IMG/VR virus record: IMGVR_UViG_3300034050_000451 | Location: 62,001 to 126,000 of that record | Strand: one strand, 5' to 3' | DNA: 64,000 bases | In this document: positions 2,819 through 62,404 of the stretch, piece after piece | Layout of the letters: each line of letters begins with the position of its first letter | Position numbering within the stretch: position 1 is the stretch's first letter | Position numbers and translations under genes: made by a program | The notes under the pieces: generated by a model | The model's database searches: none | The model's input: only the letters and a program-made list of their open reading frames with translations | Told to the model about the DNA's origin: nothing

Positions 2819-4768
2819 TTATGCTATTTGAGTTACAGTCACAATTACCGATGGTGTTGCGGGTCTAGTTGGTGATACTTGCGTTCCTTTATATTGCAAT
2901 TGTCCGTTTGCGGTTGTTTTTGACCAATACAATTCTACATAACTTCCGGATGTAATTGGAGTTAAGAAGTTTAATGCTGCCACTTGGAATCCACCACCAC
3001 TTACCTTTTCAATAGAGAAATCCGTATTTGAATTAGCTATATTAGAACCTGTCATAGCAAACCAAACAGAAAAATCACACGACTCGTTTGAGGTGGTATG
3101 TAATTGTGCTGAAAATTGAATGTTATATAATCCGTTATTTTCTACATAAATTCTAGTTGGAAATCCACTACCATTATTACCAACATATATACCTTCAAAT
3201 TCAGGAACCGGCACTTCCAACTTCATAGCGTATGCCGTATTAGCAGAACCAGTTTGAGTTTCTAATGAAGCCCATTGTCCGTAGTTGAATTGTTTGTTAC
3301 CATCCTTATAGATAGAACCACTTACATATACTGAACCACTTATATATTGTGAACCATTAAATTGATTTGAACCAGTTGTTGGTAAATTACGAGCTCCATT
3401 TATACTACCTGTTAAATTAAAATTACCACTTTCTCCAAAAGTCCATTCTCTTAAAGGAGGTCCGGCTTTGATTTTCAATGTCTCATTTCCTACACCAAGT
3501 ATAATTTGTGAGTTTGGTGCTACATTTTCAGCCGAAGTTCCAATTCTAACCGAATAATTTTCATCATCCGCATATATTTCACCAAACCCATTATTTAATT
3601 TTAAGATACCATCATCACCTAATACTATACTATGTTCACCCACTTTAAGTTCTACAGAAGCATCTGAACCAAGTTGGTAATCTGGACTTTCTATAGTCAA
3701 AGGATATGCTGGATTAAGGGATACAGATGAACCAAATGCAATAGTTCTAAAAGACTCTCCAGATGGGACATAATTACCAGTTACCGTCCTTATTGTACCA
3801 TCATAAAATCTAATTATCCATCCATTTTGTACTCCACTACTTTCTGCATTATCAGCTACAATTAATCCACTACCATTCAAACCAGTACCACCATAATAGT
3901 CTTGTGCAATTGTTATTTGTGTACCAACTGTCTCAACACTACTACCTGAAATTATATTGCCTTCAAATGTTAAAGTAGAGTCCAACAATATGGATGTACC
4001 GGAAGTTCCACTTGTACCACTTTCACCGGATGTGCCACTTTCACCAGAAGTTCCAGATGTACCATCTACTCCACTCGTACCACTTTCGCCAGATGTGCCA
4101 CCATTTCCAGATAAACTTGTATAAGTTACTCCATTTAATATAATAGAACCAGTCATTAGTAAAGAACCAGTTAAATTAATATCACCATTAGTAATGTTTA
4201 ATGAACCAGAAGTTAATCCGCTACCCAATGAATTATATCCAATATTAATATCACTAGGAAAATAACTTTTACCATCATAATCAAATACCCAATTAGATTG
4301 GAATGAACCTGATTTTTGAACTAATATTGCTGCAGTAGGTCCATCTGAAACAGGATATGAATTTAATTGATTTGCAAAAAAGGATGCATCATCAGATACA
4401 TTCGTAGGATTAGTAATAGCTCCAATTAATAAAGTTCCATCAGATGTTAGAAATAGTGGAGCTCCATCAGAACCGGTTACTCTTAAACCAAAAGAAGGAC
4501 CTCCAATAAAATTTACGTCTCCTATTGTAAGTGAAATATCACCACTACCACTTATTGTTTGAGTTCCAGTAAAAACGTTAGAACCAGTTGTTGCCAACGA
4601 ATTACTATCTGCAAATACCGAAGTACCAGAAGTTCCATTTACACCCGATGTTCCAGATGTACCAGCTACACCAACTACATCAGGTAAGTGAGATAACGAT
4701 ACTTTACCATCACCATCTAACGGAGCGTATCCATTTACTTTTCCTCTATTTATTTTACTTTCAAACAT
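2819..4768 (-). CDS. Fibre-like virion protein with collagen-like G-T-S repeats
   Basis: NGYAPLDGDGKV N-terminal motif, two Gly-X-Y tracts, TGSNxFxGxQxISGS modules and a beta-rich C-terminal domain. Confidence 0.7.
   Translation of the reverse strand: MFESKINRGKVNGYAPLDGDGKVSLSHLPDVVGVAGTSGTSGVNGTSGTSVFADSNSLATTGSNVFTGTQTISGSGDISLTIGDVNFIGGPSFGLRVTGSDGAPLFLTSDGTLLIGAITNPTNVSDDASFFANQLNSYPVSDGPTAAILVQKSGSFQSNWVFDYDGKSYFPSDINIGYNSLGSGLTSGSLNITNGDINLTGSLLMTGSIILNGVTYTSLSGNGGTSGESGTSGVDGTSGTSGESGTSGESGTSGTSGTSILLDSTLTFEGNIISGSSVETVGTQITIAQDYYGGTGLNGSGLIVADNAESSGVQNGWIIRFYDGTIRTVTGNYVPSGESFRTIAFGSSVSLNPAYPLTIESPDYQLGSDASVELKVGEHSIVLGDDGILKLNNGFGEIYADDENYSVRIGTSAENVAPNSQIILGVGNETLKIKAGPPLREWTFGESGNFNLTGSINGARNLPTTGSNQFNGSQYISGSVYVSGSIYKDGNKQFNYGQWASLETQTGSANTAYAMKLEVPVPEFEGIYVGNNGSGFPTRIYVENNGLYNIQFSAQLHTTSNESCDFSVWFAMTGSNIANSNTDFSIEKVSGGGFQVAALNFLTPITSGSYVELYWSKTTANGQLQYKGTQVSPTRPATPSVIVTVTQIA
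3992..4108 (-). repeat. Collagen-like repeat, 13 Gly-X-Y triplets (mostly GTS/GES)
   Basis: GNG GTS GES GTS GVD GTS GTS GES GTS GES GTS GTS GTS. Confidence 0.9.
4619..4672 (-). repeat. Collagen-like repeat, 6 Gly-X-Y triplets
   Basis: GVA GTS GTS GVN GTS GTS. Confidence 0.85.
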
Positions 4769-5652: not shown

Positions 5653-5667
5653 ATTTCTTTCGTTTTA

Positions 5668-8328
5668 TTAGTCTATTGCTTCGGTGATGGCTTGAGTTAT
5701 ATAGAATTGATTACTATCATCTAACGCAGTTAATACAATCGTTCCATCAAATCTTCTTTGAATAGTTTTGTTATAATTTCCATAAACCATTGGGGCTGGG
5801 TGTAATTCAGTAACTGTTAATACTAAATCAGTAGTTCCACCAAATGAACCAGATGCTATTGTTATAGTATCATCCACTTCGTATAGATTTCCACTATTTG
5901 TAATTGCAATATTACTAACAATACTTGATGCAACAGTTACTTCAAATACCGAACCCGAACCAAACCCTGCAGTTGAACCAGTTAAATCTGAATAAACTCC
6001 ATCAGTTCCATCGGTTATCGAAGATGATATGGTATTGATTACCCCTAAATATGTGGTAAAATCATAATCATCCAATTCCGTTTCTATTCTATTATATTGG
6101 AAGTCATTACCTATTCTATTGTATGTAAATCTATCTCCAATATTGTTATCGTAGAAGTATTCTCCGATTATATTGTCAGTAAAACTATTTCCAATTACAT
6201 TACCTCTATACGAACTGCCACCAAATCCAAAACCATCACCAATCATATTATCAGTAAAATCATTTCCAATTTTATTACTTTTGAAATCATTAGCAATGGT
6301 GTTATCAATAAAATTATTTAATATAAAATTCTCCACGAACCCATTACCAATATTATTTTCAATAGTATAATCACCAAATATGTTACTGATACAGCCTTCT
6401 CCTATATCGTTTCCGGTAAAAATATTACCAATAGTATTACTATTAAACCCATCTCCAATTTCATTTCCTACAAATGCATAACCAATTTTATTTGAGATAA
6501 AACTACCTGAAATTAAATTTCCTTTCATCTCATTACCTATTTGATTGTACTCAAACGATTCTAGTTCACCATTATTTACTATTGTATTCGATTCAAAATC
6601 ACTTTCAATATTATTGTGTAAAAATTCATTATTAATAGTATTATCGTAAAAACCACTACCGATTACATTATCCTCAAAAGATTGGCTAACAATATTATCA
6701 TAAAAATCATTACCGATTTTGTTTCGGGAAAAATTCGTATCACCATAATCATCAGACTCTCCTATATCGTTATTTCGAAAACTAGAACCTATTTGATTAT
6801 CTTCGGTCCAACTGTAAAAGTTATTATTATAAACTTCATGTCCTATTATTGTATTACCTAAGAATGATGAAAAGAAGTTATTATTATAAACCTCATCCGC
6901 TATTGTATTTTCTCTAAATTCATTGTAGGTCTTATTTCCGTAAAAACTTTCACCTATTCTATTATCACCAAATTCACCACCTAACACATTATTATAAAAC
7001 CCATTAAGAGTATTTTTACTAAATTCATCAAGTATGATGTTGTGGTCAAAACCTCCGTTGATTATGTTATAATAAAAATCATCATCTGATGTGTAGAAGT
7101 TATTATAGAACTCACCATTAATGATATTGTAATCAAAATCATCCTCATCCTCATCTCCAAAATGATTATTGTGGAACTCACCACTAACTGTGTTGTATCT
7201 AAAATCACAAACAATTATATTATTGTAAAAACTATCTTTGATTATGTTATTATCAAAATCGTTATTAATAATATTATTATAAAATCTATCCATAACTATA
7301 TTAGAGTTAGAACTAGCATCATTAAATGTGTTATTTCTAAAAACTTGTGAGAATGAATTATCTCTATAAGTGTTTTCACCTTTGAATACATTGTTTGGTA
7401 ATAGGAAAGTATTTTCATCCCATACCGTAAATGCAGCCGTATTTGTAGATGTGTTATTAAAACAGTCTCCTATATACTCAAAGGTTGGTATTTCTATTGA
7501 AGCTGAATTAGATAGGATGTTATTTTGTTTCCAAGACACTCCTTCTAATAGATTTGCATCTAACAAACGAGTATCACTAGGAGAGTTATATCTACTTCCA
7601 GTAACAACCATACGATAATCATCTTCAATTGATACGATTTCATAGTAAAATACAAGAGGGTCATTATTGATATTCAAAACACCAACAACACTTCCAGTTG
7701 TGAAATTTTCAAAAAATGTTCCACTACCGGTGATAAAAGCAAAACTACCAGATTCTTCAACAGAAATAGTTCCATCATAAACATCTTCAGAATAATATGC
7801 ATCATATCTTTTGAAAAGAACTTCTCTGAAATCGTAATCCATTTCGTTTCCTTGATTATCTTTTCTATATATAATTCTACCAAATGCAGGACTATCAGTT
7901 ACTTCGGTTTGATTAAATGTAATATCGTATTTAATATTATCATTTGGATATTCGGGTTGATATGCATCTGATGCCAAAGAACCGGAGTCTAATGCGAATA
8001 CAATTATAGGTGAAATACTACCTGTTCTATAATTACCAACTTGAATTGAGTTACCATAAACATCATAATCCGGTTGGTCATAACAAGTCCTAAAATCGGT
8101 AATCTTATAGTAAGTACCAGGTGTTAATGAATCAGTCGCTAATGAAGCGGTTAATCCATTATAAGTGGTTTCTACTAATCCACCACCAGCTCCACCACCG
8201 GTTAGATTACCTTCACTATCTTTTGCTTTGATAGAGCCATTTGTTGTATCTATAAACAAATTATACCCACCTTCTAATGGAGTATCTAAATCTGCGGCTA
8301 CTTGCCCTTGTAATTGAATGTATTGCAT
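5668..8328 (-). CDS. Fibre/spike-like virion protein with an Asn-rich beta-helix repeat region
   Basis: LTPGTYYKITDF motif and a long run of approximately 11-aa N-x-I-G-x-x-F-x-x-N repeats. Confidence 0.7.
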   Translation of the reverse strand: MQYIQLQGQVAADLDTPLEGGYNLFIDTTNGSIKAKDSEGNLTGGGAGGGLVETTYNGLTASLATDSLTPGTYYKITDFRTCYDQPDYDVYGNSIQVGNYRTGSISPIIVFALDSGSLASDAYQPEYPNDNIKYDITFNQTEVTDSPAFGRIIYRKDNQGNEMDYDFREVLFKRYDAYYSEDVYDGTISVEESGSFAFITGSGTFFENFTTGSVVGVLNINNDPLVFYYEIVSIEDDYRMVVTGSRYNSPSDTRLLDANLLEGVSWKQNNILSNSASIEIPTFEYIGDCFNNTSTNTAAFTVWDENTFLLPNNVFKGENTYRDNSFSQVFRNNTFNDASSNSNIVMDRFYNNIINNDFDNNIIKDSFYNNIIVCDFRYNTVSGEFHNNHFGDEDEDDFDYNIINGEFYNNFYTSDDDFYYNIINGGFDHNIILDEFSKNTLNGFYNNVLGGEFGDNRIGESFYGNKTYNEFRENTIADEVYNNNFFSSFLGNTIIGHEVYNNNFYSWTEDNQIGSSFRNNDIGESDDYGDTNFSRNKIGNDFYDNIVSQSFEDNVIGSGFYDNTINNEFLHNNIESDFESNTIVNNGELESFEYNQIGNEMKGNLISGSFISNKIGYAFVGNEIGDGFNSNTIGNIFTGNDIGEGCISNIFGDYTIENNIGNGFVENFILNNFIDNTIANDFKSNKIGNDFTDNMIGDGFGFGGSSYRGNVIGNSFTDNIIGEYFYDNNIGDRFTYNRIGNDFQYNRIETELDDYDFTTYLGVINTISSSITDGTDGVYSDLTGSTAGFGSGSVFEVTVASSIVSNIAITNSGNLYEVDDTITIASGSFGGTTDLVLTVTELHPAPMVYGNYNKTIQRRFDGTIVLTALDDSNQFYITQAITEAID

Positions 8329-8332: not shown

Positions 8333-9097
8333 TTATATTATTGTTCCTGTTCCGTCTATTGATGAATTACCTATTAATATAACTTCTCCACCCACACTTA
8401 TCTTACCATTATTTTCAATAACACTATCTTTAAGTAATAGATTTCCACCTATAAATAGTGTTCCTTCTTTTTTGAATGATTTGTTTGCGGAGTATTCTAC
8501 TTCTTCATCACCACCTTCAATTAATAAAAATCCGTTTTCTAAAATATAATCTCCCGAAAAAGTTAATTGTTCTGTTTTTCTTATTAAATATGAATCGTAT
8601 GTGTTATTCCAATTTGTATTTGCTGATAAATTTGTTAGTTGTCTACCATCTCCTAAATAAGCCGATGCTGTTAGTGCTGCCGTATATTTTACAGTCTTTT
8701 GTCCACCAGCATTATTCTCAATTGAAAATGATGAAGTTTCTTGCGTTACCGCATCTACGAAAATAATTGAACCTTGTGATATATAAAGGTCTTTCCAAGC
8801 ATTTGATGGTGAACCTAAACTAAATGAAGATGTGAATGTTCCTTGTCCAGTTGCCGGTACTAATGAACCACTAATTAGGATTGAGCCACTTATAACTTGC
8901 TCACCTCTAAAGGTATTCGAACCTGTGATTGCAAATTTATTATTTAATGTGGCTTGTGATGCTGTATAATCATTAAAAGAAGATGTTGTTACTAAGAAAG
9001 ATAAATCACTATCTTGTGCAGAATCTCCTTTTGGTCCTTGAACACCAACCGATGATATAGTTACTTTTGTTAAATTTTGTGTTACTTTTATTGCCAT
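8333..9097 (-). CDS. Fibre-like virion protein
   Basis: GVQGPKGD short collagen motif, ITGSNTFRGEQVISGS, FSLGSPSNAWKDLY and YLGDGRQLTNL fibre-type motifs. Confidence 0.65.
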   Translation of the reverse strand: MAIKVTQNLTKVTISSVGVQGPKGDSAQDSDLSFLVTTSSFNDYTASQATLNNKFAITGSNTFRGEQVISGSILISGSLVPATGQGTFTSSFSLGSPSNAWKDLYISQGSIIFVDAVTQETSSFSIENNAGGQKTVKYTAALTASAYLGDGRQLTNLSANTNWNNTYDSYLIRKTEQLTFSGDYILENGFLLIEGGDEEVEYSANKSFKKEGTLFIGGNLLLKDSVIENNGKISVGGEVILIGNSSIDGTGTII

Positions 9098-9098: not shown

Positions 9099-9482
9099 TT
9101 ATCTCGTTACGTTTTTAGATAATTTAACTTTACCTTCCAATAATCTCGTAACTTCACACCCTTTAACCACTTCTAAATCATAAACTGCTTCACCAAAATC
9201 TAATAAAGATGATGAATATGCTGATATATAGATACCTATTGAACCACTTTGTATTGGTGTTATACCATTTGAACCACTTAGATTAATACCCGTTCCACAA
9301 CTATCCGAAAGTGATGATGATAGTGATAACAATGTTGTTGTTGACTCTACGTGCGGACGTATTTGCATTCTCGCATGATAACCACTCAAATCAATTGCCG
9401 AACCACTTTCATCGGTCCAATCAATTTGAAAATTAGTTGTTGCTCCTTGCTCTATTACAAATGAGTATCTTCCTGCTGCCAT
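9099..9482 (-). CDS. Small virion adaptor-like protein
   Basis: IEQGATT...IDLSGYHARMQIR...AVYDLEV...RLLEGKV pattern, common upstream of phage fibre genes. Confidence 0.6.
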   Translation of the reverse strand: MAAGRYSFVIEQGATTNFQIDWTDESGSAIDLSGYHARMQIRPHVESTTTLLSLSSSLSDSCGTGINLSGSNGITPIQSGSIGIYISAYSSSLLDFGEAVYDLEVVKGCEVTRLLEGKVKLSKNVTR

Positions 9483-11076: not shown

Positions 11077-12717
11077 TTAAATAGAAGCTAAATCTTTAAC
11101 AAAAATACGACCGTAGTACTCAGGACGAACCATTTTCTTAGCGTATCTTGTCATTACACCTCTACGAGGAGTAAAGTTTGTTGGGTCATACACCAAAGGA
11201 GTCATAATTAATGGAACGTATGGTGCGTAAACAGCTCCAGTTTCCAAGAAGTTTGAACCTCTGAATCCTAACAAGATTTCGTTTGAAGTCATGTAAGGGT
11301 TTTTGTAAACAGTGTATCTATTAGCGATAGCACCAACTTGCGTTACACCAGCTGCGAAAGATGCAGAATCCTTATCAGCGTTCACTGTAAATGCAGGAAT
11401 CGATTCTAAGATAGTACATACATCAGGAGAAGCAACAACGAAGTTAGCTCCACCTCTTAATGTCAATTGGTGAATTTTGTTAGATACTTTGTTTAATTTA
11501 GTACCTAAAGTTTGGAACCAAGTATTCTTTTGGTAAGCCATTCCAGTTGCTGCTCCAGACCATACGCCTGATGCTGCATTGTATTCTTCACCAATAGTTG
11601 CTGACCAATACTCAGTAGTTAAAGCGTTTGATTTTAACATATCTAAGATTTCTAAGTCAATCTCTAAAGAGATATAATCAGATAACATAGAAGTTAATTC
11701 CGCTTCAGCGTCAATTGAGTGGTAAGCGTTCAAATCTTGCGCCAATTCAGGAGTCCATACTGCTTTCAACTTACGAGTCTTAGCAACGATAGCCTCTGAT
11801 TTCAATTCTAAGTCAACCTCAGGAATATCGATATCAGTTCCGATTGTTCCTTCAGTATCTGCTCTTTTACCAGAGTTTTTACCATCTTCAAAATCACCTC
11901 TAGAGTAATCATTTGGTACAACTGAGTAAGTTAATACTACAGTTTGTGCAGCAGTTTTAGCAGTTTGTAAACCAGCAGATGCTGATACGAACATTACTAA
12001 GTTAGCTCCAGATACTTTGTGGAATTGATTTAAGTTAGTAAGTGAACCACTTGCTACGTTAAATGAACGTACACCATCTAAATCAGCTGTTGTTGGAGCT
12101 GTGAAAGTTGCTTTATGCACTTGTCCAGCTGCTACAGAAGCAGAAAGTTCAGATGTAAATCCTACATCAGCCCAAGATGCTGAAGTATAAGTGATTGCAG
12201 AGTGAGCGAAAGATGCAGTTACATCATTTACTGTGTATCCGAATCTACCTTCACCATATAAACCATTTTCAGCTACTGCAGTAGTACCGAAACCAGCACC
12301 AGCAGCAGAATCTTGTCCGTTACCACCAAAAAGTGATTTTCCAGAGAAAGTTGGGTTACCACCTTGAGCAGTACCATATTTGAAATCCAAATAGAATACA
12401 AGTCCAGAAGGTAAGTTCATAGGTTGTACACTAACGAATTCTTTAGAAGCAATCTCACCGAAGATTCTTCTTACTAAAGGTAAAGCTACACCGCTCCACT
12501 CTTCAGAGTTTGCACCAACACCAGTTTGTGTTGCTTCATCAAGCAATTGTTTTGCTTGGTTTTCCAAAAGTACAGCCATTGCACTTTGGTCTTTTGTCTT
12601 TAAGCCTTCAAGAAGTCCAGTTTTTTCCCATTTTGATTTAAGTTGACGAGTTTCGTTCAACATAACCGATTGTGGGTTCTTTCCTTCCATTAACTTAGAT
12701 AAATCGAAATTTGCCAT
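11077..12717 (-). CDS. gp23: Major capsid protein (T4 gp23-like)
   Basis: VSVQPMNLPSGLVFYLDF, AKTRKLKAVWTPELAQDLNAYHSIDAEAEL, YAPYVPL and PRRGVMTRYA. Confidence 0.97.
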   Translation of the reverse strand: MANFDLSKLMEGKNPQSVMLNETRQLKSKWEKTGLLEGLKTKDQSAMAVLLENQAKQLLDEATQTGVGANSEEWSGVALPLVRRIFGEIASKEFVSVQPMNLPSGLVFYLDFKYGTAQGGNPTFSGKSLFGGNGQDSAAGAGFGTTAVAENGLYGEGRFGYTVNDVTASFAHSAITYTSASWADVGFTSELSASVAAGQVHKATFTAPTTADLDGVRSFNVASGSLTNLNQFHKVSGANLVMFVSASAGLQTAKTAAQTVVLTYSVVPNDYSRGDFEDGKNSGKRADTEGTIGTDIDIPEVDLELKSEAIVAKTRKLKAVWTPELAQDLNAYHSIDAEAELTSMLSDYISLEIDLEILDMLKSNALTTEYWSATIGEEYNAASGVWSGAATGMAYQKNTWFQTLGTKLNKVSNKIHQLTLRGGANFVVASPDVCTILESIPAFTVNADKDSASFAAGVTQVGAIANRYTVYKNPYMTSNEILLGFRGSNFLETGAVYAPYVPLIMTPLVYDPTNFTPRRGVMTRYAKKMVRPEYYGRIFVKDLASI

Positions 12718-14017: not shown

Positions 14018-14305
14018 TTAATACGATTGCCCAGTATTTATATTAAATTCAGGTATACCATAATATGCAATACCTACACCAGATGATTGTGTAATCTCAG
14101 TTATACTACCGAATACATCTACTCCAGCTGGTATTGTATTTAAACCAAATGAACCAGATATTTGTGAAGCATTAAATTTAAGGTCAGTTACTGTAGCTGT
14201 TACCGTCTTATAACGATATACATTACTAACTGTTAATTGCCTAGACCCACTTATAATTTGAGCCCCACCTAGCCCATACGCATGTTTGTTAGAATCGATA
14301 TACAT
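14018..14305 (-). CDS. Hypothetical small (probably virion) protein
   Basis: 95-aa co-oriented ORF with ISGS motifs like the structural proteins. Confidence 0.65.
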   Translation of the reverse strand: MYIDSNKHAYGLGGAQIISGSRQLTVSNVYRYKTVTATVTDLKFNASQISGSFGLNTIPAGVDVFGSITEITQSSGVGIAYYGIPEFNINTGQSY

Positions 14306-49289: not shown

Positions 49290-49305
49290 TCGAAATATAC
49301 TTTCA

Positions 49306-49313
49306 TATAAATA
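49306..49313 (-). promoter_or_regulatory. Putative phage late promoter (TATTTATA)
   Basis: Recurrent motif 16 nt upstream of the ATG at 49289. Confidence 0.6.
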
Positions 49314-49323
49314 TCTAATAAAC

Positions 49324-49350
49324 AAAAAACCCCCTTATTCAGGGGGTTTC
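49324..49350 (-). terminator. Rho-independent terminator
   Basis: Minus strand AAACCCCCT-GAATA-AGGGGGTTT plus further Ts. Confidence 0.85.
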
Positions 49351-51287: not shown

Positions 51288-54200
51288 TTAGTCAACCTCC
51301 AATATTGGTTCACCTGAACCTCTACCAGTATTAGCCACTCTAAGAATGTTAGGATTAGTAGTAAATATTTCAACCGGGTCTAATCCATCAGGCGTTGTAG
51401 TTGATGTTTGTTGTGAACCTTCGAAAAATGAATATTTTAATCCTTGTGTTAAATTATTTTTATAACGATAATGTGATGGGAAGTAACCATTTAATGGAGT
51501 TACCTCTATTACATTATTACCAATCGATGGTGGAGTTGCCCCAACCGGTACAATTGATACATTATACCTATAATTAGTTACTTCTTGAATTTCGTACTTA
51601 ATTTGTTCATTATTTGTTGTTGCCGGCCAACCTTCAGTTTGAACACTTACTTTTTCTATATAAGATTCCTTAACTTTATATATTTGCTTTCTTGATGAAG
51701 TCATATTACCAAATATATCTAATGTTGTCAACGAACCAGTTCCATTTAATGCATATAATCCAAATCCTGCCAAATCCAATGATTTATCATCCATTCCAAT
51801 TTGTGTAGATGAGAATGAATCAACAGTAGATTCTAATTTGGAACCATTTGGAATTTCAATTTCTACTTCATAAGTTGGATATGAACCTTCTAATACCGTA
51901 ACATCTTCTAATTCAATTAATGAATCATATGTAGGATAATCAACTAATAATCTTGTAATTTCATCTGAATTAATGGTTGCTTCATAGTTATCCATTTGAA
52001 ATGAAAACTCAACATTATCAGTTGTATTAATAGATGTATCATGTACATTATAAGTAGATTCAACTTCTATATTATCACGTGTATCAATTGATGATTCATA
52101 ATCACCCCTTTCAGCTGCTGGTTGTTTCCATTTAGTTTTACTTCTTTCTAAATAATGTGGTTCAATTAATAAACCTTTAGAAACACTAGCTCTAGCCGGA
52201 ACTAAATCTTGTAATACATCAAATAATGATTTGTCGATTTGTCTAACTAACTGAATGTATTCATAAATATCTCTATCTAATCTTTCAAAATAGTATTCTC
52301 TTAAAATTCTAAGTTCGTTGTAATCATCCTTATATTCATCAGCAGGTGCACCAATATAATTGTCAATGTTGAATGAACCAAATGATTTTAAGATATCCAT
52401 ATTCAATTCCTTAACAGGCGAAAAGAATAATCCTAATCTATTTGAATCAACTGGTGCTCTATCAAATGCTTTTTTGGTTGCTCTAACTTTGTGAGATAAA
52501 TCACCAACTAAAGTTTGTTGTTCAAATCTAATTTTATCAGATTGATTAAATCCTAATGACGGTACGTTTGCCGTTACAGTCCTATCATATGGAGTATATT
52601 GGTATGGATAAATGCTTGATGATGGGAATGATACAGTTGTACCATATGTTACACCATAAGCTTGAGAAACCGCAACATTCAATAAGTTGTTATCGGCTGT
52701 TCTATCTTTTGGGTATTCAAAATCAAATCTAACCCATAAATCTTCAGTAGATGCTGTATATGAATTTCCATTGGTTGCATCAGGTAGAAGTGTATGTGTT
52801 TCAATTACACCATCTTCCAATGGTTGTTTCCATAAACGGAACTCATCCATTGAACCACTTAATGCATATCCAATTTTAATCAAACTACCAGTATTCCAAG
52901 AAGTATTACCAGTTAATACTAATGGTGCCGATGTTACTTGCGTTCTAATTCTATCACCCAATGCATCCTTTGCAATAATTTGAAAAGATGAATTAGCTCC
53001 AACTAATGTTCTATTAATTACAATCTCAGTATATTCATCATTGAATATATTAAATTCAGATGTGGATGCGGATGCTACTAATCCAGTCGATGCTGATACA
53101 TAAAAATCTAATGTACCAAATGTACCCTTTGTATTAGTAACTCCCAGTTTCCAATTTTGAATAGAACCACTTTCAGCTTTTACAATACCATAATTACCCG
53201 GCTGAGTTAGATTAACTCTTAACTCAACTGAATTTGGATATGTACCACTTACTTCTTTCCAATCCGTTTGAACATATTCATTTGTATTGGTAAAGTTAAT
53301 AGCTGCCGTTCTATCATCAAATGTAAATTTGGTGCTACCACCCAATGTTGGGTCTTGTGGTCCACCAAACTCCATAATAGTTAATAGAGATTGTGGTACT
53401 CCATAACAAGCCATTACAGCTTTTAAAGAACGAGCCGTACCTTTATGTTTTAATAAATAAGGTAAGTTGTTTAATATTCTTCTCCAAACTTCTTCGTTTG
53501 CAGATTTTAAACTTGTACCATATTTTTCAGTTCCATCTTTGTTTTGTCCAAATGCATACTCCCATAGGAATTGAGAATCGTATGCACGTTTCCCCTCCCA
53601 TCCCATTGATTCCAACATTTGGAATACCAATTCATCTGAGAATCCATTTGAAGTGGCTTGGTTAAGATTTTTTAATTGTTTTAATGAATTTATGTATGCC
53701 CAAATGATATCAAAGTGCTGTCCAATCATATCTAAGAATAACATATATTCTTCATTGTCATAATCCTCTTTGATAAATCTAGGAAGATTATTATTTAGAT
53801 AGTTTGGATTATACTTATCATAATCATCAGCCACACTTATAATAGTATCATACCAATCAATTGCCGTATTACTTGTAGTTGCTACAATTGTATTAGAAAC
53901 TTTTGGATATGCTAAAGAATTTGTTGATGTATATAAGAATGTTTCAAATCCATCAAATGAACCAATTAAATTATTAATATTATCTAATTGTTTATTTGCT
54001 TCAATTTGAGATAGAATATTGTAAGAAGGAGTTTCGTACTCTAAAAATAAATCATTTTCGGTTAATAAATAATAATCATTCTCCGTTGTTAAATAAGTTA
54101 ATACAACATTTTGAGAAGAAACTGAGTTATAGGTTGTTTGGTATGTTTCTAATAATTGAATCTTATACCAAAAGTTTTTAACTCTTTCAGCAGATGAACC

Positions 54201-55544
54201 AAAATGTACATAGTTATCAAAGGTATATGTTGAACCAGATACATATTCAATATTTAATTGAGATGTATCAATATCATTATTTGTTATATACTTTTGTATT
54301 AATGATGTTGATGTAGTTGAACCACTTGCAATCAAATCAGCAAAGATTTGCATTCCAGTTCCATTATCAGTTTCTAATGTAAAATTAGGTCCTTTTAATG
54401 GTTGACATAAACTATCTAATTTACCAACCAATGTAACCATTTCAATCATTGGTTCCGTTTGTGCCTTTGTTATCCAAACTTTTTGGTTTGGTTGCACAGA
54501 CGTTGGTAATGGTTCGTATAATTTAAGGATTAATGAATCCTCAGTTGGAGATAATACTGCTTTATCAATATTACTCTCATCTAATCCAGTCCAAGTTGTA
54601 ATTACTTTGTTATCACCATTACCTAAATGTAATAAGTGAGTTAAGAATTTAGATTCATCAAATATTTTTCTATCGAACTGAGCAACAAATCCTTCAACAA
54701 TTCTATTGATTGCTAAATCTCTTGGTATCTCTAAGTCACCCTTATCAAATAGGATAGGAATAAATTCAATAGGCCCCGTTACAACTTCTTTACCTGCAGT
54801 ATTATATGGTATTAATTTAAGAGGAATTGTTACTTTATCAGTAGTAGATTGGTTTATATTAACCATATCTCCATTTCTTCTAAAATCAGATTGAGCTATG
54901 CCATCTTCCAAATTAACTGAAATTTCTTTTTTAGTTAATTTAGTACTAATTGGAGTAGCCGTTTCAAAAACACTAGCTGGGTATTTCTCAACTAATTGTT
55001 TTACATTAAATGTTTGCGTACCCTTTGGTGAAACTTGAATATAATCAGTTGAATTACCAACATATATTCTAACATATGTAGTATCAACAGAATTCCAACT
55101 AATATCAAAGTTTACATCATACCCAATAAAATCAGCACCTCTAACTACTTTAGGATAACTAATTTCTCTAATATCAGGCACATTTACAAATACATCATCA
55201 ACTACATTAATGAAAATATCTAAACCAAATTCAGATACATTTATTGATTCTTGAGTAGGTTGATTTGTAACAATACTTTGAGCTACAGTTATTGGAGCTG
55301 GTTTGATTTGTTCCCTTATAGGATTATTTGTAAGTAATCCAATTTCATTTTTAGGTGTTGTTGGAAATGTAATTGGTGTTATTGGAATTGTTATAGGTGG
55401 TTGTGATACAATTGTCGCACCTCCACCGCCGCCTCCTCCTCCATAATTTGGAAAATTAAAGCCACCGCCTCCACCACCATCATTGATGAATGAAAATCCA
55501 CCCTCTGTGTTGGAACCTAAATCCGTTTGTAGTGCTCTTATCAT
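51288..55544 (-). CDS. Large baseplate wedge-like protein with a LamG/ConA-like domain and Gly-rich N-terminus
   Basis: LPYLLKHKGTARSLKAVMACYG (gpI/gp7-like) and LSGSMDEFRLW (LamG-like). Confidence 0.7.
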   Translation of the reverse strand: MIRALQTDLGSNTEGGFSFINDGGGGGGFNFPNYGGGGGGGGATIVSQPPITIPITPITFPTTPKNEIGLLTNNPIREQIKPAPITVAQSIVTNQPTQESINVSEFGLDIFINVVDDVFVNVPDIREISYPKVVRGADFIGYDVNFDISWNSVDTTYVRIYVGNSTDYIQVSPKGTQTFNVKQLVEKYPASVFETATPISTKLTKKEISVNLEDGIAQSDFRRNGDMVNINQSTTDKVTIPLKLIPYNTAGKEVVTGPIEFIPILFDKGDLEIPRDLAINRIVEGFVAQFDRKIFDESKFLTHLLHLGNGDNKVITTWTGLDESNIDKAVLSPTEDSLILKLYEPLPTSVQPNQKVWITKAQTEPMIEMVTLVGKLDSLCQPLKGPNFTLETDNGTGMQIFADLIASGSTTSTSLIQKYITNNDIDTSQLNIEYVSGSTYTFDNYVHFGSSAERVKNFWYKIQLLETYQTTYNSVSSQNVVLTYLTTENDYYLLTENDLFLEYETPSYNILSQIEANKQLDNINNLIGSFDGFETFLYTSTNSLAYPKVSNTIVATTSNTAIDWYDTIISVADDYDKYNPNYLNNNLPRFIKEDYDNEEYMLFLDMIGQHFDIIWAYINSLKQLKNLNQATSNGFSDELVFQMLESMGWEGKRAYDSQFLWEYAFGQNKDGTEKYGTSLKSANEEVWRRILNNLPYLLKHKGTARSLKAVMACYGVPQSLLTIMEFGGPQDPTLGGSTKFTFDDRTAAINFTNTNEYVQTDWKEVSGTYPNSVELRVNLTQPGNYGIVKAESGSIQNWKLGVTNTKGTFGTLDFYVSASTGLVASASTSEFNIFNDEYTEIVINRTLVGANSSFQIIAKDALGDRIRTQVTSAPLVLTGNTSWNTGSLIKIGYALSGSMDEFRLWKQPLEDGVIETHTLLPDATNGNSYTASTEDLWVRFDFEYPKDRTADNNLLNVAVSQAYGVTYGTTVSFPSSSIYPYQYTPYDRTVTANVPSLGFNQSDKIRFEQQTLVGDLSHKVRATKKAFDRAPVDSNRLGLFFSPVKELNMDILKSFGSFNIDNYIGAPADEYKDDYNELRILREYYFERLDRDIYEYIQLVRQIDKSLFDVLQDLVPARASVSKGLLIEPHYLERSKTKWKQPAAERGDYESSIDTRDNIEVESTYNVHDTSINTTDNVEFSFQMDNYEATINSDEITRLLVDYPTYDSLIELEDVTVLEGSYPTYEVEIEIPNGSKLESTVDSFSSTQIGMDDKSLDLAGFGLYALNGTGSLTTLDIFGNMTSSRKQIYKVKESYIEKVSVQTEGWPATTNNEQIKYEIQEVTNYRYNVSIVPVGATPPSIGNNVIEVTPLNGYFPSHYRYKNNLTQGLKYSFFEGSQQTSTTTPDGLDPVEIFTTNPNILRVANTGRGSGEPILEVD

Positions 55545-57004: not shown

Positions 57005-57008
57005 ATCT

Positions 57009-57016: not shown

Positions 57017-57022
57017 TCAAAT

Positions 57023-58225: not shown

Positions 58226-58239
58226 TTTTATATTTTATA

Positions 58240-59304: not shown

Positions 59305-59306
59305 AA

Positions 59307-60371
59307 TTATGCTATAACACTAAATGTATAATCTTCATCAAAAAATTGAGGTGTTCCATCAACCACAACTTTAATTTCTATTTTATATACTCTGTCAACT
59401 TCCCAATTAGATAAATTTAATTTAAAGAAGTTTCCATCCGTATCACAACTTACTTTAGTAAATTCACCAAATGGTACAATTACATCACCACTGTGGTAAT
59501 CTGATATTTGGTAATACGTTTGTTCATTTAAGAACTTTGATGTTGAGTATTGAGCGGTTGAACTAAATGTTTTAATTGGATATAATTCTCTACCAACTAC
59601 TCTTATTTTAGGAGTTGTATTTACTTTATATTCCTTTTTAAAATTTCTTAATCCAACTTTTATTTCTTCTGCTACCAATTCAGTCATTGAACCAGTTACA
59701 AAAGTTGTATCATCCCAACCAATTCTAATTTTTGGTTGATGTATTGTTTTTGTTTCTTTACTAAAGAATTTTAAAATACCATAATCAGATGTATTATATT
59801 CATTTGCAAATGGTAGTTTTAAAATAAGACCATCATTTGGAATTGAACCACTAATCCAATCTTGCATAATATCGTTGATATCCATATTGACATCAGTTGT
59901 ACGATATTCAAAATCTTGCGTAGCAAATACATTTGAATAAAATGTACCACCTAAACCAGCATAAGAACCAGTAGATACTTCAGAAAATTCTGCGGTTTGT
60001 AACCAACGTAATACTGAATCTCCCTCTCTATTGTTCCAAGTTACCCCAGCGGTTGTGATATCATCAAATCGAGTACCCTTGCCCATTTCCCAACTTTGTG
60101 AGATTGGATATGCCTCCAATGTAAATTCCAATGGTAGTTCCTCAGAATCAGTTTCTCTCAAAACTAACTCAGCAGAACTCATTGTTACATCACCACTAGC
60201 TATACTAGCTGAGAGTGGCTCTATATCGAATTTAAGGAGTGCTCTTGATATATCTTTTATGTTACCATAAAATACCTTACTCACTTCCAATACTTCATCT
60301 AAACCAGTGTTTTGGTCTGGTTGTTGTAAGTACACCGATGCATCTTTTGATGCTGTTAAAAAGTATATCAT
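59307..60371 (-). CDS. Baseplate-region structural protein
   Basis: KDASVY...NTGLDEVLE...SRALLKFD...SQSWEMGKG...FFSKET...PKIRIGWDD; coupled to gp6. Confidence 0.65.
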   Translation of the reverse strand: MIYFLTASKDASVYLQQPDQNTGLDEVLEVSKVFYGNIKDISRALLKFDIEPLSASIASGDVTMSSAELVLRETDSEELPLEFTLEAYPISQSWEMGKGTRFDDITTAGVTWNNREGDSVLRWLQTAEFSEVSTGSYAGLGGTFYSNVFATQDFEYRTTDVNMDINDIMQDWISGSIPNDGLILKLPFANEYNTSDYGILKFFSKETKTIHQPKIRIGWDDTTFVTGSMTELVAEEIKVGLRNFKKEYKVNTTPKIRVVGRELYPIKTFSSTAQYSTSKFLNEQTYYQISDYHSGDVIVPFGEFTKVSCDTDGNFFKLNLSNWEVDRVYKIEIKVVVDGTPQFFDEDYTFSVIA

Positions 60372-62404
60372 TATTTAGCTCTTCCTTTTATATCCACGTC
60401 CGGAAACTTAACTTCAAAAACCGATGGGTCCAATGATGGATAAATTACTTTATCTTTAGTTGCCGCCATTATATTATATGAATTAGCAGAATATTGTCCA
60501 CCACATTTATTTACAATTTCCATTTTTGGTACTGAACTTACCCCATCCACATTAGCTACTATTAATTCCAATTCACTTAAGTTGATAGTATTATTAAATG
60601 TCCAATTATCAATATTAAAATAATCTTTTAATTCTTGAATACAATTAGATAGTACTTCACTATTGTTGTAATTTCTAAGTGTAATAATTTCAAAATTAAT
60701 TCCAATGTTTATAATATATCCATTTGATATATTTACACCATCGGTAAGAATTTTATATTCTGTTAAATATGTTTTTAAGTTTTCCTTAACTGCTCTATTC
60801 AGTTCCGAAAGTTTACCATCTGCATCATATCCTAATAAATAAAGATTGATTGCGAATGGGTTATTTTTTTCATTATCATTTGAAGTTTTACCAACTAAGA
60901 AATCTCTAATTTCAGTTTGTACACTTCTCCTATCAGGTTCTTCATTATCCGGCTTATTAACAAAACTCATTACCAAATCAGTAAACTCATTTAGAGCCGA
61001 TGGTGATGATAATATTGCTGATGGGGAGTTGTTATCCAATGTACCATCTGCCGTAGCGTATGCCTTTGCAATACCCCCAAATTTGGATGGCATTGCCAAT
61101 ACTCTAATTTGATAATCTTTAGCAGTTACTGCTCTATTTTGTGAACCAAAGTTTGCTAATGCATTTTGTCTAATCTCTTCAATTGCTTCACCATCTCTAC
61201 CACCAGTTGCAGGTACTTCATTATCAACGGCAATTGATGCTTTTGTTGTATTATAAATTGCACGTTCCGTATCAGTAAATAATTGTGTATCTTCTTCAAA
61301 TTGAATACCAGTAATTCTAGTAAGTGTACCTTTACCAACATTTGATGAAACACCACCACCAACTAAATACTTAAGAGTTATAGTTGTATTTGATGGTGAA
61401 GTACCATAAGTTTTAGTATGTAAGAAATTGGTTGGGTCAAATGATGCTTCCAATCTATTGATTGAATTTGGTAAACCTAATCCAACATTTTTTAAATTTG
61501 GAATTAAAGTTTCATCATTTGCAGTTGGGTCACCAGCACCAAATTGAACAGTAGTTGTACTATCTGAATTTACTTTCTTTACAAAACGTTTTGGTGTTTT
61601 TATTGTTTTAAGAATGTAAGGTACTGTTGTTTTAAATTGATATAAGTCCGGGTCATTATTTTCAGTATTTGGGTAATCCACAAATACCATTTCTTGTCCT
61701 AAATATGGAACCTCATAATATTTGTTTCCGTTTAAATCTCTTACATCATAAATATCAATTACATTAGTATCAGCAATATCAATTTTTTGAAATGCTTCAT
61801 ATGAACCAAAATCAAAATCTTGCGTTTTTATTTCAGCTGAAATTGCGTTTACATATTTCTTAACTAAATAAAATGATGGTTCACCAGAAATGGCATCCCT
61901 TTCATATAAAGTTAGTTCTCTATCAGTTGAATCGGTAAAATCTATAACATTTTGAGTAATGAATTTAATACCACTTGCTGATTCAACCTGCATACCCTCT
62001 TTAATCCTAAGTAAAAACTTAGTATCAATTGTATTATTAACACCAGTACCAATAGCTGGTACTAATTGGTAAACCGATAATGTTGTAATTGCAGGTGATG
62101 TTACTTTTGGAGTGTATCCTAAATATTGTGATAATGCAATAACATTTTCAATATCTTCCGCATGAACCATTAATGATTCCTTTAACGTATCATCAATGTA
62201 ATATGAAAGTGAATCACCTATATACGATGCCATTTCAATGAACATCATACCAGGAGATGATTCATTAAAATCAGAATATGTTTTAGGGAAATAAGTTTTA
62301 CTAAACTCTATTAAATTATTTCTAAAGTCCGTAAAATCTTTATTAAGGTATTTTATATCCTTACCCTTATTCTTAAAATTCTTATTTGTTTTAGTTATTG
62401 CCAT
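60371..62404 (-). CDS. gp6: Baseplate wedge subunit (T4 gp6-like)
   Basis: YLNKDF...YSDFNESSPGMMFIEMASYIGDSLSYYID and GGRDGEAIEEIRQNA...QNRAVTAKDY. Confidence 0.9.
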   Translation of the reverse strand: MAITKTNKNFKNKGKDIKYLNKDFTDFRNNLIEFSKTYFPKTYSDFNESSPGMMFIEMASYIGDSLSYYIDDTLKESLMVHAEDIENVIALSQYLGYTPKVTSPAITTLSVYQLVPAIGTGVNNTIDTKFLLRIKEGMQVESASGIKFITQNVIDFTDSTDRELTLYERDAISGEPSFYLVKKYVNAISAEIKTQDFDFGSYEAFQKIDIADTNVIDIYDVRDLNGNKYYEVPYLGQEMVFVDYPNTENNDPDLYQFKTTVPYILKTIKTPKRFVKKVNSDSTTTVQFGAGDPTANDETLIPNLKNVGLGLPNSINRLEASFDPTNFLHTKTYGTSPSNTTITLKYLVGGGVSSNVGKGTLTRITGIQFEEDTQLFTDTERAIYNTTKASIAVDNEVPATGGRDGEAIEEIRQNALANFGSQNRAVTAKDYQIRVLAMPSKFGGIAKAYATADGTLDNNSPSAILSSPSALNEFTDLVMSFVNKPDNEEPDRRSVQTEIRDFLVGKTSNDNEKNNPFAINLYLLGYDADGKLSELNRAVKENLKTYLTEYKILTDGVNISNGYIINIGINFEIITLRNYNNSEVLSNCIQELKDYFNIDNWTFNNTINLSELELIVANVDGVSSVPKMEIVNKCGGQYSANSYNIMAATKDKVIYPSLDPSVFEVKFPDVDIKGRAK

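What the first reader, a model, noticed from the sequence alone, without database searches (positions are those of the whole stretch)
2819..62404. Virion proteins are saturated with [S/T]-[G/A]-S tripeptides: a candidate glycosylation sequon
Seen: SGS/TGS/SAS/TAS/SSS recur throughout predicted virion proteins. Examples are VISGSILISGSL (254 aa); ESGS, LSGS, QSGS (127 aa); VSGSNG, VSGSL, VSGSIS (401 aa); NSGSVDPTGSY; LSASIASG, STGSY, ISGSI (354 aa); and dozens in the 2789-aa fibre. By eye they are rare in terminase, portal, primase, Mre11-Rad50 and the sugar enzymes. Known: Aah/TibC heptosylate Ser in short Ser-Gly turns of beta-rich passenger domains. Inference: unrelated surface proteins converged on one acceptor motif for the phage's own transferase, giving a glycan-coated virion.
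Basis: partly seen in the sequence, partly recalled or inferred. Interest (0 to 1): 0.78.

Follow-up and report, generated by a model that had tools for sequence, protein, structure and literature searches.

The report
Ser-Gly-Ser signature on phage virion surfaces
The outward-facing virion proteins of this uncultured T4-like phage carry three to four times more [Ser/Thr]-[Gly/Ala]-Ser tripeptides than chance allows, and the phage encodes a true TibC-type protein heptosyltransferase. Relatives without that enzyme carry the same signature, so it is probably not that enzyme's private glycosylation code.

Summary
[ST][GA]S occurs 105 times in the window's 54 proteins. The 23 virion or tail-module proteins hold 101 (27.7 expected from composition); the other 31 proteins hold 4 (8.6 expected). 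SGS is the most over-represented of all tripeptides, and the signal is order-specific (TGS 31 against SGT 17; TAS 16 against SAT 3). It is encoded at the protein level and spread over 11 proteins with no detectable sequence similarity. SSS is not enriched.

The transferase is also real. Gene 30442-31593 passes the curated Aah/TibC model and keeps the catalytic Asp and all four iron-finger Cys. It sits beside heptose kinase-like and adenylyltransferase-like genes and a GT4+methyltransferase gene.

Phages with no TibC homolog (Flavobacterium phage immuto, Rhodothermus phage RM378) show the same enrichment, as do eight metagenomic relatives with no TibC homolog at the syntenic site. Some phages that carry the enzyme lack the enrichment. 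T4, two Bacteroidota siphophages and the huge phage LR756508 also lack it.

In the capsid protein, 91% of sites fall in one hypervariable region. I read the motif as a lineage-specific signature of exposed virion surfaces. Its status as a glycosylation sequon is unproven.

The parts
2819..4768 (-). 649-aa fibre-like protein, 15 [ST][GA]S sites (3.9 expected), including hexad-spaced pairs at aa 200/206 and 477/483
5668..8328 (-). 886-aa protein of the fibre module, 12 sites (1.5 expected)
8333..9097 (-). 254-aa protein, 5 sites (1.3 expected); contains VISGSILISGSL
9099..9482 (-). 127-aa protein (phrog_1084; weak match to tail-fibre assembly), 3 SGS sites (0.7 expected)
11077..12717 (-). T4-type major capsid protein, 6 sites (1.4 expected), 5 of them in aa 167-247. 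In 72 relatives 91% of sites fall in aa 125-275, a hypervariable, indel-rich region.
14018..14305 (-). 95-aa protein, 2 SGS sites (0.4 expected)
34552..42921 (-). 2789-aa fibre, 34 sites (8.4 expected), no internal repeats detectable by BLAST. It lies about 0.9 kb upstream of the glycosyltransferase cassette, with two small genes between them (34139-34525, a tail-fibre assembly/chaperone-like gene, and 33811-34083).
48351..49325 (-). 324-aa baseplate-module protein, 4 sites (0.5 expected)
49380..50585 (-). 401-aa baseplate-module protein, 4 SGS sites (1.3 expected); two columns are shared with the Mel-JY01 and immuto orthologs
51288..55544 (-). 1418-aa baseplate-module protein, 9 sites (2.2 expected); most site positions are not shared with orthologs
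59307..60371 (-). 354-aa beta-sandwich baseplate-module protein next to the gp6-like wedge protein, 5 sites (0.6 expected). Its 57 metagenomic orthologs carry 3-8 sites each and 0-1 of the reverse motif.
30442..31593 (-). Aah/TibC-family protein O-heptosyltransferase (BAHT, bacterial autotransporter heptosyltransferase), 383 aa, 0 motif sites
31584..33746 (-). 720-aa GT4-type glycosyltransferase fused to a TylF/Methyltransf_24 methyltransferase. In Mel-JY01 the BAHT lies in one 1226-aa protein with a GT4 domain (the record names it methyltransferase FkbM). In LR756501 a homolog of this gene lies next to the BAHT.
30056..30445 (-). 129-aa nucleotidyltransferase; best family is heptose 1-phosphate adenylyltransferase (rfaE domain II), below the curated cut-off
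29311..30063 (-). 250-aa PfkB-type kinase; best family is heptose-7-phosphate kinase (rfaE domain I; PDB 4e84), below the curated cut-off

Best explanation
[ST]-[GA]-S (core [ST]-G-S, with hydrophobic residues at -2, -1 and +1) is a genuine, order-specific signature of the outward-facing virion proteins. It is found in this phage and in a patchy set of related aquatic and thermophilic T4-like phages.

Shown:
- It is not a by-product of Ser/Gly richness, of a DNA word, of internal repeats or of paralogy.
- It tends to sit where beta-strands end.
- In the capsid protein it is confined to one hypervariable region.
- Individual sites turn over between orthologs while the density is kept.
- Its presence does not depend on the TibC-type heptosyltransferase.

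Inferred: selection acts on exposed virion surfaces for a hydroxyl-small-hydroxyl strand-exit or turn element. This is a surface design idiom of these lineages, not a feature required by the folds. The heptosyltransferase + GT4/methyltransferase + heptose-activation cassette is a separate, exchangeable accessory module. It probably O-heptosylates Ser on fibre-type proteins, first of all the nearby 2789-aa fibre. It may use some of these exposed Ser as acceptors because they resemble the strand-loop-strand sites of its bacterial relatives, but it did not create the motif.
For: Reality and specificity of the motif:
- The enrichment is robust.
- Only S is favoured after SG or TG, only S or T before GS, and G then A in the middle. 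The same holds in immuto and Mel-JY01 but not in T4.
- The signal is at the protein level: Ser uses both TCN and AGY codons, and the word GGTTC occurs 76 times in frame 0 against 2 and 2 in the other frames.
- The carrier proteins are not paralogous.
- Flanking residues are hydrophobic: 56% at -1 and 55% at +1, against a 33% background.

Independence from the BAHT (TibC-type heptosyltransferase):
- immuto and RM378 lack it and are equally enriched.
- Capsid proteins give 18 vs 5.8 with the BAHT and 21 vs 7.9 without it.
- 80 baseplate loci give 793 vs 405, and 72 capsid proteins give 307 vs 100.
- BAHT-carrying loci L020, L055 and L056 show no excess in neighbouring fibres.

Surface restriction:
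- 91% of capsid sites lie in aa 125-275, and the conserved HK97 core is depleted (SGS 2 vs 9.8).
- Portal, protease, the gp6-like and gp25-like proteins have 0-1 sites.

Not intrinsic to the folds:
- LR756508 has orthologs (capsid protein 53% identical) without enrichment.
- T4 has none.

Position in models and in fibres:
- Sites lie at strand ends, at turns and in one helix in two AlphaFold models.
- Hexad or heptad repeats of the motif occur in fibre shafts.
Against: - No physical reason is established for Ser-only specificity at position 3. Generic beta-turn statistics (my own knowledge, not tested here) would also allow Asn, Thr or Asp.
- Confinement to exposed, hypervariable regions, together with site turnover, is also what a modification sequon would show.
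- Every enriched phage carries glycosyltransferases. A GT4 found only in this clade (best solved relative: chlorovirus glycosyltransferase B736L) is shared by RM378, immuto and Mel-JY01.
- Both structure models are of moderate or low confidence (mean pLDDT 70 and 63).
- Solvent exposure could not be computed.
Confidence: 0.42

Rival explanations
1. Clade-wide O-glycosylation (or other Ser modification) sequon. The position-3 Ser of [ST]-[GA]-S on exposed virion surfaces is the acceptor for phage-encoded cytoplasmic glycosyltransferases. Different lineages attach different sugars; here it would be heptose through the BAHT cassette, elsewhere through the clade GT4 or other enzymes. The result would be a glycan-coated virion.
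For: - Specificity is strict at all three positions.
- Sites are confined to the exposed hypervariable part of the capsid protein and to external components.
- Sites turn over while density is kept.
- The trait lies on top of conserved folds and is absent from LR756508 and T4.
- All four enriched cultured or assembled phages carry glycosyltransferases.
- A GT4 whose best solved relative is chlorovirus B736L occurs, among 50,697 phage records, only in RM378, immuto, Mel-JY01 and LR756508. It has at least 578 IMG/VR hits.
- Virion glycosylation by phage enzymes is known in mycobacteriophages (Freeman et al. 2023, cited in PMC12619734).
Against: - No single transferase tracks the motif. The BAHT is absent from enriched immuto and RM378. 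The clade GT4 is present in non-enriched LR756508.
- Non-virion proteins do not clearly avoid the motif: observed/expected is 0.66 in immuto and 0.90 in Mel-JY01, against 0.61 in T4.
- Flanks are hydrophobic, some conserved sites lie in a helix, and many sites are part of structural shaft repeats.
- Different transferase families sharing one tripeptide acceptor would be unusual.
Confidence: 0.27
2. One reading: the motif is the acceptor sequon of this phage's own TibC-type heptosyltransferase, and unrelated virion proteins converged on it.
For: - The gene is a true BAHT: TIGR04414 at 285.6 bits against a cut-off of 200; TibC E 3.4e-55; Asp110, Thr226, Lys230, Trp305 and the four Cys are conserved.
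- Heptose kinase-like and adenylyltransferase-like genes are adjacent.
- The cassette lies about 0.9 kb downstream of the most site-rich protein.
- BAHTs are Ser-specific, and the mapped TibA sites are Ser followed by Gly or Ala (QNSGG, NTSAA; PMC4358343).
- In several other phage lineages the BAHT lies next to Ser-rich fibres that are enriched in the motif (L037, L040, L049, L050, L053).
Against: - There is a double dissociation. Enrichment is equal in BAHT-free immuto, RM378 and eight relatives with no BAHT at the syntenic site. BAHT-carrying L020, L055 and L056 show no enrichment in neighbouring fibres.
- Pure (Gly-Thr-Ser)n collagen-like neighbours of the BAHT contain no [ST]GS at all.
- The TibA sites are S-[GA]-[GA], not [ST]-[GA]-S.
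Confidence: 0.1
3. Artefact: the excess only reflects Ser/Gly/Thr-rich composition, local low-complexity patches, repeated domains or a nucleotide-level motif.
For: The carrier proteins are Ser/Gly/Thr-rich. The capsid variable region is richer in S, G, T and A than the rest of the protein. A few sites come in tandem hexads.
Against: - Permutations of the same residues are not enriched or are depleted (GSS, SSG, SGG, SGT, SAT, STS).
- The excess persists under first-order Markov and region-restricted expectations.
- BLAST detects no paralogy or internal repeats.
- The DNA word is frame-specific and Ser codons are mixed.
- T4 fibres, and siphophages of Bacteroidota hosts, show nothing.
Confidence: 0.02

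Closest known systems
Aah/TibC bacterial autotransporter heptosyltransferases (BAHT) acting on AIDA-I and TibA of E. coli
   Same: Gene 30442-31593 aligns over its full length with TibC (PDB 4rap, E 3.4e-55). It passes the curated equivalog model. It keeps the catalytic Asp110, Thr226, Lys230, Trp305 and the Cys339/342/358/370 iron finger. ADP-heptose-type activation genes are adjacent. The candidate substrates are beta-rich, Ser-rich surface proteins.
   Different: It is encoded by a phage, with no autotransporter substrate. Arg286 aligns to Val and Pro300 to Gly. In relatives it is paired or fused with a GT4 glycosyltransferase (the pairing partner here also carries a methyltransferase domain). 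The mapped TibA sites are S-G-G or S-A-A rather than [ST]-[GA]-S. Activity, donor and oligomeric state are untested.
Virion glycosylation of mycobacteriophages (Freeman et al. 2023, Cell Host Microbe; cited in PMC12619734)
   Same: Phage-encoded glycosyltransferases sit beside structural genes. The proposed outcome is a glycan-decorated capsid and tail.
   Different: In the mycobacteriophages the glycans sit at the C-termini of the capsid and tail-tube subunits. Here the candidate sites are internal, spread over many proteins, and the enzyme family is different. Nothing has been shown experimentally here.
Chlorovirus capsid glycosylation by virus-encoded cytoplasmic glycosyltransferases (for example B736L, PDB 3oy2)
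   Same: The clade-specific GT4 of RM378, immuto and Mel-JY01 has B736L as its best solved relative (E 1.5e-8). The virus encodes its own sugar machinery.
   Different: The role of chlorovirus enzymes in capsid glycosylation is stated from my own knowledge, not tested here. No function is known for the phage GT4. It is also present in LR756508, which lacks the motif excess.
Structural shaft repeats of phage fibres (beta-helix or beta-spiral hexad/heptad repeats; collagen-like Gly-X-Y arrays)
   Same: Runs such as L-SGS-LNL-TGS-LLM-TGS-L, and TAS-Y/SGS-F repeats in immuto and metagenomic fibres, place the motif at fixed periods like a structural repeat.
   Different: Most sites in the window are isolated, not periodic. 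They also occur in the capsid protein, in sheath proteins of relatives and in baseplate proteins. T4 fibres lack the excess.

Membership tests
BAHT (Aah/TibC autotransporter strand-loop-strand O-heptosyltransferase) | Full-length sequence membership above the curated threshold | tested here: met
   NCBIfam TIGR04414 hepto_Aah_TibC scores 285.6 bits against a cut-off of 200, covering residues 20-381. phmmer against TibC 4rap gives E 3.4e-55 over residues 33-377.
BAHT (Aah/TibC autotransporter strand-loop-strand O-heptosyltransferase) | Catalytic base Asp110 and sugar-binding residues Thr226, Lys230, Arg286 and Trp305 (PMC4358343) | tested here: inconclusive
   Asp110, Thr226, Lys230 and Trp305 are conserved in the alignment. 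Arg286 aligns to Val, with a Lys one position earlier (read).
BAHT (Aah/TibC autotransporter strand-loop-strand O-heptosyltransferase) | Four-cysteine iron finger (Cys339, 342, 358, 370 in TibC) | tested here: met
   All four Cys align (C-G-G-C ... W-C-P ... F-E-C) and are also invariant in the Mel-JY01 homolog.
BAHT (Aah/TibC autotransporter strand-loop-strand O-heptosyltransferase) | Dodecameric ring; transfer of heptose from ADP-heptose to Ser of a beta-helical substrate | not testable with these tools
   Needs biochemistry. Only indirect support is available: adjacent genes whose best families are rfaE domain I and rfaE domain II, both below cut-off.
Glycosylation sequon of the phage's own transferase | Motif over-represented in presumed substrates beyond composition | tested here: met
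Glycosylation sequon of the phage's own transferase | Motif density co-varies with presence of the transferase across related genomes | tested here: not met
   immuto and RM378 lack the BAHT but are enriched. Capsid proteins give 18 vs 5.8 with the BAHT and 21 vs 7.9 without. BAHT-carrying L020, L055 and L056 are not enriched.
Glycosylation sequon of the phage's own transferase | Sites lie on exposed parts of the substrates | tested here: inconclusive
   Capsid sites are confined to the hypervariable aa 125-275 region, and internal virion parts lack sites. The models place sites at strand ends and turns. No solvent accessibility could be computed.
Glycosylation sequon of the phage's own transferase | Avoidance of the motif in cytoplasmic non-substrate proteins | tested here: inconclusive
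   The window's non-virion proteins give 2 vs 7.4. Baseline ratios are 0.61 in T4, 0.66 in immuto and 0.90 in Mel-JY01.
Glycosylation sequon of the phage's own transferase | Modified Ser detected on virions | not testable with these tools
   Needs mass spectrometry.
Mycobacteriophage-type virion glycosylation | Glycans on C-terminal extensions of the capsid and tail-tube subunits | tested here: not met
   No motif sites occur in capsid aa 475-546 in 73 sequences; sites are internal.

The most novel reading that the evidence does not exclude
[ST]-[GA]-S is a true O-glycosylation sequon that marks the exposed surfaces of capsid, sheath, baseplate and fibres in an abundant lineage of aquatic T4-like phages (hundreds of IMG/VR contigs, plus Mel-JY01, immuto and RM378). 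It would be written by exchangeable phage-encoded transferase modules, here a TibC-type heptosyltransferase with a GT4/methyltransferase extension. The virion would then wear a lineage-specific glycan coat predictable from sequence.
Probability: 0.3. Interest if true: 0.85.

Novelty: new variant of a known kind. Interest (0 to 1): 0.6.

Why it matters
If the motif marks modification sites, glycan shields on phage virions could be read directly from sequence in a widespread environmental phage lineage. Such shields have so far been shown only for mycobacteriophages. They would bear on adsorption, stability and recognition.

Two results stand even without that. First, phages carry genuine Aah/TibC-family protein heptosyltransferases. 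There are 46 IMG/VR loci and 4 GenBank phage records, often adjacent to or fused with a GT4 glycosyltransferase and sitting beside giant or collagen-like fibres. My literature searches found no description of this. Second, a three-residue signature separates exposed from internal virion proteins in these phages. It is easy to test on the cultured phages Mel-JY01, immuto and RM378.

Tried and rejected
- Composition artefact: rejected by per-protein shuffles, permutation controls, first-order Markov expectation and region-restricted expectation.
- DNA-level motif: rejected, because the word is frame-specific and Ser codons are mixed.
- Paralogy or internal repeats: rejected.
- Generic property of myophage fibres: rejected by T4.
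- Host-phylum effect: rejected by Flavobacterium siphophage 11b and Bacteroides phage B40-8.
- Property intrinsic to the shared folds: rejected by LR756508, whose orthologs lack the excess.
- The conserved C-terminal 400 aa of the 1490-aa protein as a clade-wide writer: rejected. It is absent from immuto and RM378, and the N-terminus looks like an NMN adenylyltransferase.
- Clade GT4 as a sufficient writer: weakened by LR756508. Whether the window's own genome carries it could not be checked, because the rest of the 168-kb contig was not retrievable.
- Identifying the 354-aa baseplate-module protein by fold search gave only generic beta-sandwich matches.
- Orthologs of the 401-aa protein were not within the fetched flanks.
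It was redone without those rows.
- The T4 head review held no residue ranges for the gp23 insertion domain.

Full report
**Setting.** The window is part of an uncultured T4-like myophage. It matches IMG/VR contig IMGVR_UViG_3300042385_001265 (168,635 bp) at 100%. GC content is about 32% and all genes lie on the minus strand. The annotated parts are:
- neck proteins at 51-2738;
- a fibre module at 2819-9482;
- the T4-type major capsid protein (MCP) at 11077-12717;
- the prohead protease, the portal (19133-20989) and the large terminase (21403-22989);
- a 1490-aa multidomain protein;
- a sugar cassette at 29311-33746;
- a 2789-aa fibre;
- an Mre11-Rad50 fusion and a primase;
- a baseplate module at 48351-62839.

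The closest annotated phages by terminase are Microcystis phage Mel-JY01 (55.7%) and Flavobacterium phage immuto (54.7%).

**The observation.** [ST][GA]S occurs 105 times in 54 proteins. Per-protein shuffles show strong excess in 11 proteins. The fibre has 34 against 8.4 expected, 2819-4768 has 15 against 3.9, 5668-8328 has 12 against 1.5, and the capsid protein has 6 against 1.4. Thirty-seven proteins have none. With classes fixed beforehand, the virion and tail-module proteins give 101 against 27.7 and all others 4 against 8.6.

An unbiased scan of every tripeptide ranks SGS first (39 against 11.4, z 8.9). TGS is also high (z 6.2), followed by SAS (z 4.6) and TAS (z 3.5). The permutations of the same residues are at or below expectation: SGT, SAT, GSS, SSG, SGG and SSS. 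Specificity is sharp at each position. After SG or TG only Ser is favoured, before GS only Ser or Thr, and in the middle Gly then Ala.

- The excess persists at about 2x over a first-order Markov expectation that already contains the motif's own dipeptides.
- Flanks are hydrophobic at -2, -1 and +1.
- The signal is at the protein level. Both Ser codon families are used, and the word GGTTC occurs 76 times in frame 0 against 2 and 2 in the other frames.
- The 11 carrier proteins show no mutual or internal similarity by BLAST.

SSS does not belong to the motif, and several virion proteins (gp6-like, gp25-like, neck proteins, 55592-58225) are not enriched.

**The enzyme.** Gene 30442-31593 is a real Aah/TibC-family protein O-heptosyltransferase (BAHT, bacterial autotransporter heptosyltransferase):
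- It scores 285.6 bits on NCBIfam equivalog TIGR04414, whose cut-off is 200.
- It aligns with TibC (4rap) at E 3.4e-55 over the full length.
- Read against the TibC paper (PMC4358343), it keeps the catalytic Asp110, Thr226, Lys230, Trp305 and all four iron-finger cysteines.
- Arg286 aligns to Val and Pro300 to Gly.

The neighbouring genes fit a heptose pathway. Their best families are heptose-7-phosphate kinase (PDB 4e84; rfaE domain I) and heptose-1-phosphate adenylyltransferase (rfaE domain II), both below the curated cut-offs. Gene 31584-33746 is a GT4-type glycosyltransferase fused to a methyltransferase. In Mel-JY01 the BAHT forms one 1226-aa protein together with a GT4 domain; the record names that protein methyltransferase FkbM. 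In the huge phage LR756501 the homologs of 31584-33746 and of the BAHT are adjacent. These genes therefore behave as one module.

Among 50,697 GenBank phage records only Mel-JY01 and three huge phages carry a BAHT. IMG/VR holds 46 such loci. My literature searches found no description of phage BAHTs.

**The link between motif and enzyme.** For this transferase, that is what I find.
- Mel-JY01 (BAHT present): 139 against 63.9; SGS 59 against 21; TGS 40 against 16.
- immuto (BAHT absent): 181 against 85.5. SGS is again the top tripeptide of the whole proteome (65 against 24), with TGS 53 against 23.
- Rhodothermus phage RM378 (BAHT absent): 81 against 35.2; SGS 29 against 10; TGS 24 against 8; SGT 8 against 9.

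Portal-anchored IMG/VR loci separate relatives that have the cassette at the syntenic site from eight that lack it there. Capsid proteins give 18 against 5.8 with the BAHT (window, Mel-JY01, L139, L166). They give 21 against 7.9 without it (immuto, L162, L181, L195, L208, L211).

The dissociation also runs the other way. The fibre next to the BAHT in L020 has 7 against 10.9. The collagen-like (Gly-Thr-Ser)n proteins next to it in L055 have 15 against 17.4 and 5 against 13.7. L056 shows no excess.

In several other lineages the BAHT does sit beside Ser-rich, motif-rich fibres or collagen-like Gly-Ser-Ser/Gly-Thr-Ser arrays (L037, L040, L044, L048, L049, L050, L053). This supports fibres as its likely targets, but it does not establish the tripeptide as its code.

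**How widely the signature occurs.**
- It is pervasive in the window's lineage. Eighty baseplate loci give 793 against 405, with T[GA]S 370 against S[GA]T 167.
- The 57 orthologs of the 354-aa protein carry 3-8 sites each and 0-1 reverse motifs.
- The 72 capsid proteins give 307 against 100.
- It is absent from T4: 26 against 43.3, with gp34, gp37, gp12, gp23 and the sheath all unremarkable.
- It is absent from Flavobacterium siphophage 11b and Bacteroides phage B40-8.
- It is weak and undirected in cyanophage S-H38.
- It is absent from LR756508, a 484-kb relative whose capsid protein is 53% identical to the window's: 57 against 43.7, capsid 1 against 0.7.

The trait therefore follows neither the host phylum nor the shared folds. 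It is patchy even within the clade.

**Behaviour of the sites.** Between window, Mel-JY01 and immuto orthologs (about 30-50% identity) most site columns are not shared. In the 1418-aa family only about 3 of 27 columns are shared. Among closer relatives some columns are nearly fixed, such as TAS at aa 6, SGS at aa 174 and TGS at aa 226 of the 354-aa protein. Other columns come and go.

In the capsid protein, 91% of 313 sites in 73 sequences fall within aa 125-275. This region is indel-rich and hypervariable. There are no sites in aa 300-375 or 400-449, and one across aa 450-546. Within that region alone:
- SGS is 82 against 17.8, SAS 102 against 19.4, TGS 55 against 16.0 and TAS 47 against 16.9;
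- SGT, GSS, SSG and STS are depleted;
- the conserved core is depleted in the motif (SGS 2 against 9.8).

AlphaFold models of the 354-aa protein (mean pLDDT 70) and of the capsid protein (mean pLDDT 63; the variable region scores 66-88) place sites mostly at the ends of strands or in short connections, with one in a helix. In fibres the motif can form hexad or heptad repeats. Non-virion proteins show no clear avoidance. Observed/expected is 0.61 in T4, 0.66 in immuto and 0.90 in Mel-JY01; the window's 0.27 rests on 2 sites against 7.4 expected.

**Interpretation.** The data show a lineage-specific, selection-maintained signature of exposed virion surfaces that does not depend on the BAHT. I put the most weight (0.42) on a surface design idiom. 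This would be a hydroxyl-small-hydroxyl element at strand exits and turns, with the BAHT-GT4/methyltransferase-heptose cassette as a separate, exchangeable module. That module probably decorates fibre Ser residues and may use some of these sites.

A clade-wide modification sequon served by other or several transferases remains a serious rival (0.27). Three things favour it: the three-position specificity, the restriction to exposed hypervariable regions, and the site turnover. In addition, a GT4 found only in this clade is shared by RM378, immuto and Mel-JY01; its best solved relative is chlorovirus B736L. That GT4 is also present in non-enriched LR756508, so no candidate writer tracks the trait.

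The remainder is for mechanisms not considered here.

**Limits.**
- Gene calls in the comparison genomes are longest-ORF heuristics.
- "BAHT absent" for IMG/VR contigs means absent at the syntenic site and from a pattern-limited scan.
- Counts across related sequences are not independent events.
- Both structure models are of modest confidence, and solvent exposure could not be computed.
- The remainder of the window's own genome could not be inspected.

Noticed in passing
window 1-64000: GATC does not occur at all in 64,000 bases (232 expected from a maximal-order Markov estimate). CATG (53 vs 201) and CTAG (60 vs 124) are also strongly under-represented. This looks like complete avoidance of a Dam/MboI-type site. 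It probably explains why Gly before Ser inside the motif is GGT in 88% of cases against 55% elsewhere, since GGA-TCN would create GATC.
   Followed up: partly
window 24407-28879: The 1490-aa protein has an NMN-adenylyltransferase-like N-terminus and a GNAT domain. Its C-terminal ~400 aa are 63-86% identical in the close IMG/VR relatives (45-51% in more distant ones), while the rest of the protein varies from about 780 to 1980 aa. In GenBank phages that C-terminal part is found only in Mel-JY01 and two huge phages. Its function is unknown.
   Followed up: partly
L222:9165-10619 (RM378), L005/L006 (immuto 49172-50614), L002:33441-34932 (Mel-JY01): A GT4 glycosyltransferase occurs, among 50,697 phage records, only in RM378, immuto, Mel-JY01 and LR756508. 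It has at least 578 IMG/VR hits, and its best solved relative is chlorovirus glycosyltransferase B736L (3oy2, E 1.5e-8). In Mel-JY01 it is split into two adjacent ORFs. Apart from replication enzymes (DNA polymerase I-like 5'-3' exonuclease, helicase), it is the only non-structural gene that BLAST finds shared by RM378 and immuto, and Mel-JY01 has it too.
   Followed up: partly
L044:13243-14511, L048:7779-9983, L050:2934-8540 and 11238-15155, L055:11867-18222: In other phage lineages the TibC-type gene sits next to proteins made largely of collagen-like Gly-Thr-Ser / Gly-Ser-Ser triplet arrays (Ser 15-38%). These are plausible heavily O-modified fibres.
   Followed up: partly
L001:4750-8430 (Mel-JY01): The protein annotated 'methyltransferase FkbM' is a 1226-aa fusion with a GT4 glycosyltransferase domain near the N-terminus and a TibC-type heptosyltransferase at the C-terminus. 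BAHT ORFs of about 700-1000 aa, long enough to be similar fusions, occur in several IMG/VR loci (their extra domains were not scanned).
   Followed up: partly
window 51288-55544 (aa 23-42) and 55592-57004 (aa 34-43 and around 400-450): Long poly-glycine runs lie near the N-termini of two neighbouring baseplate-module proteins. They account for GGG being the second most over-represented tripeptide (40 vs 11).
   Followed up: no
window 2819-10694 and 55592-59304: Relatives such as L142, L162 and L166 go almost directly from the capsid gene to the neck gene. The fibre module 2819-10694 therefore looks like an insertion specific to this phage. The three baseplate-module genes 55592-59304 have no homolog in Mel-JY01 or immuto.
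   Followed up: partly
window 43202-46333: Mre11 (SbcD-like phosphoesterase, N-terminal) and Rad50 (SbcC-like) are fused into one 1043-aa protein. Mel-JY01 has the same fusion, while LR756508 and T4 have separate genes.
   Followed up: no
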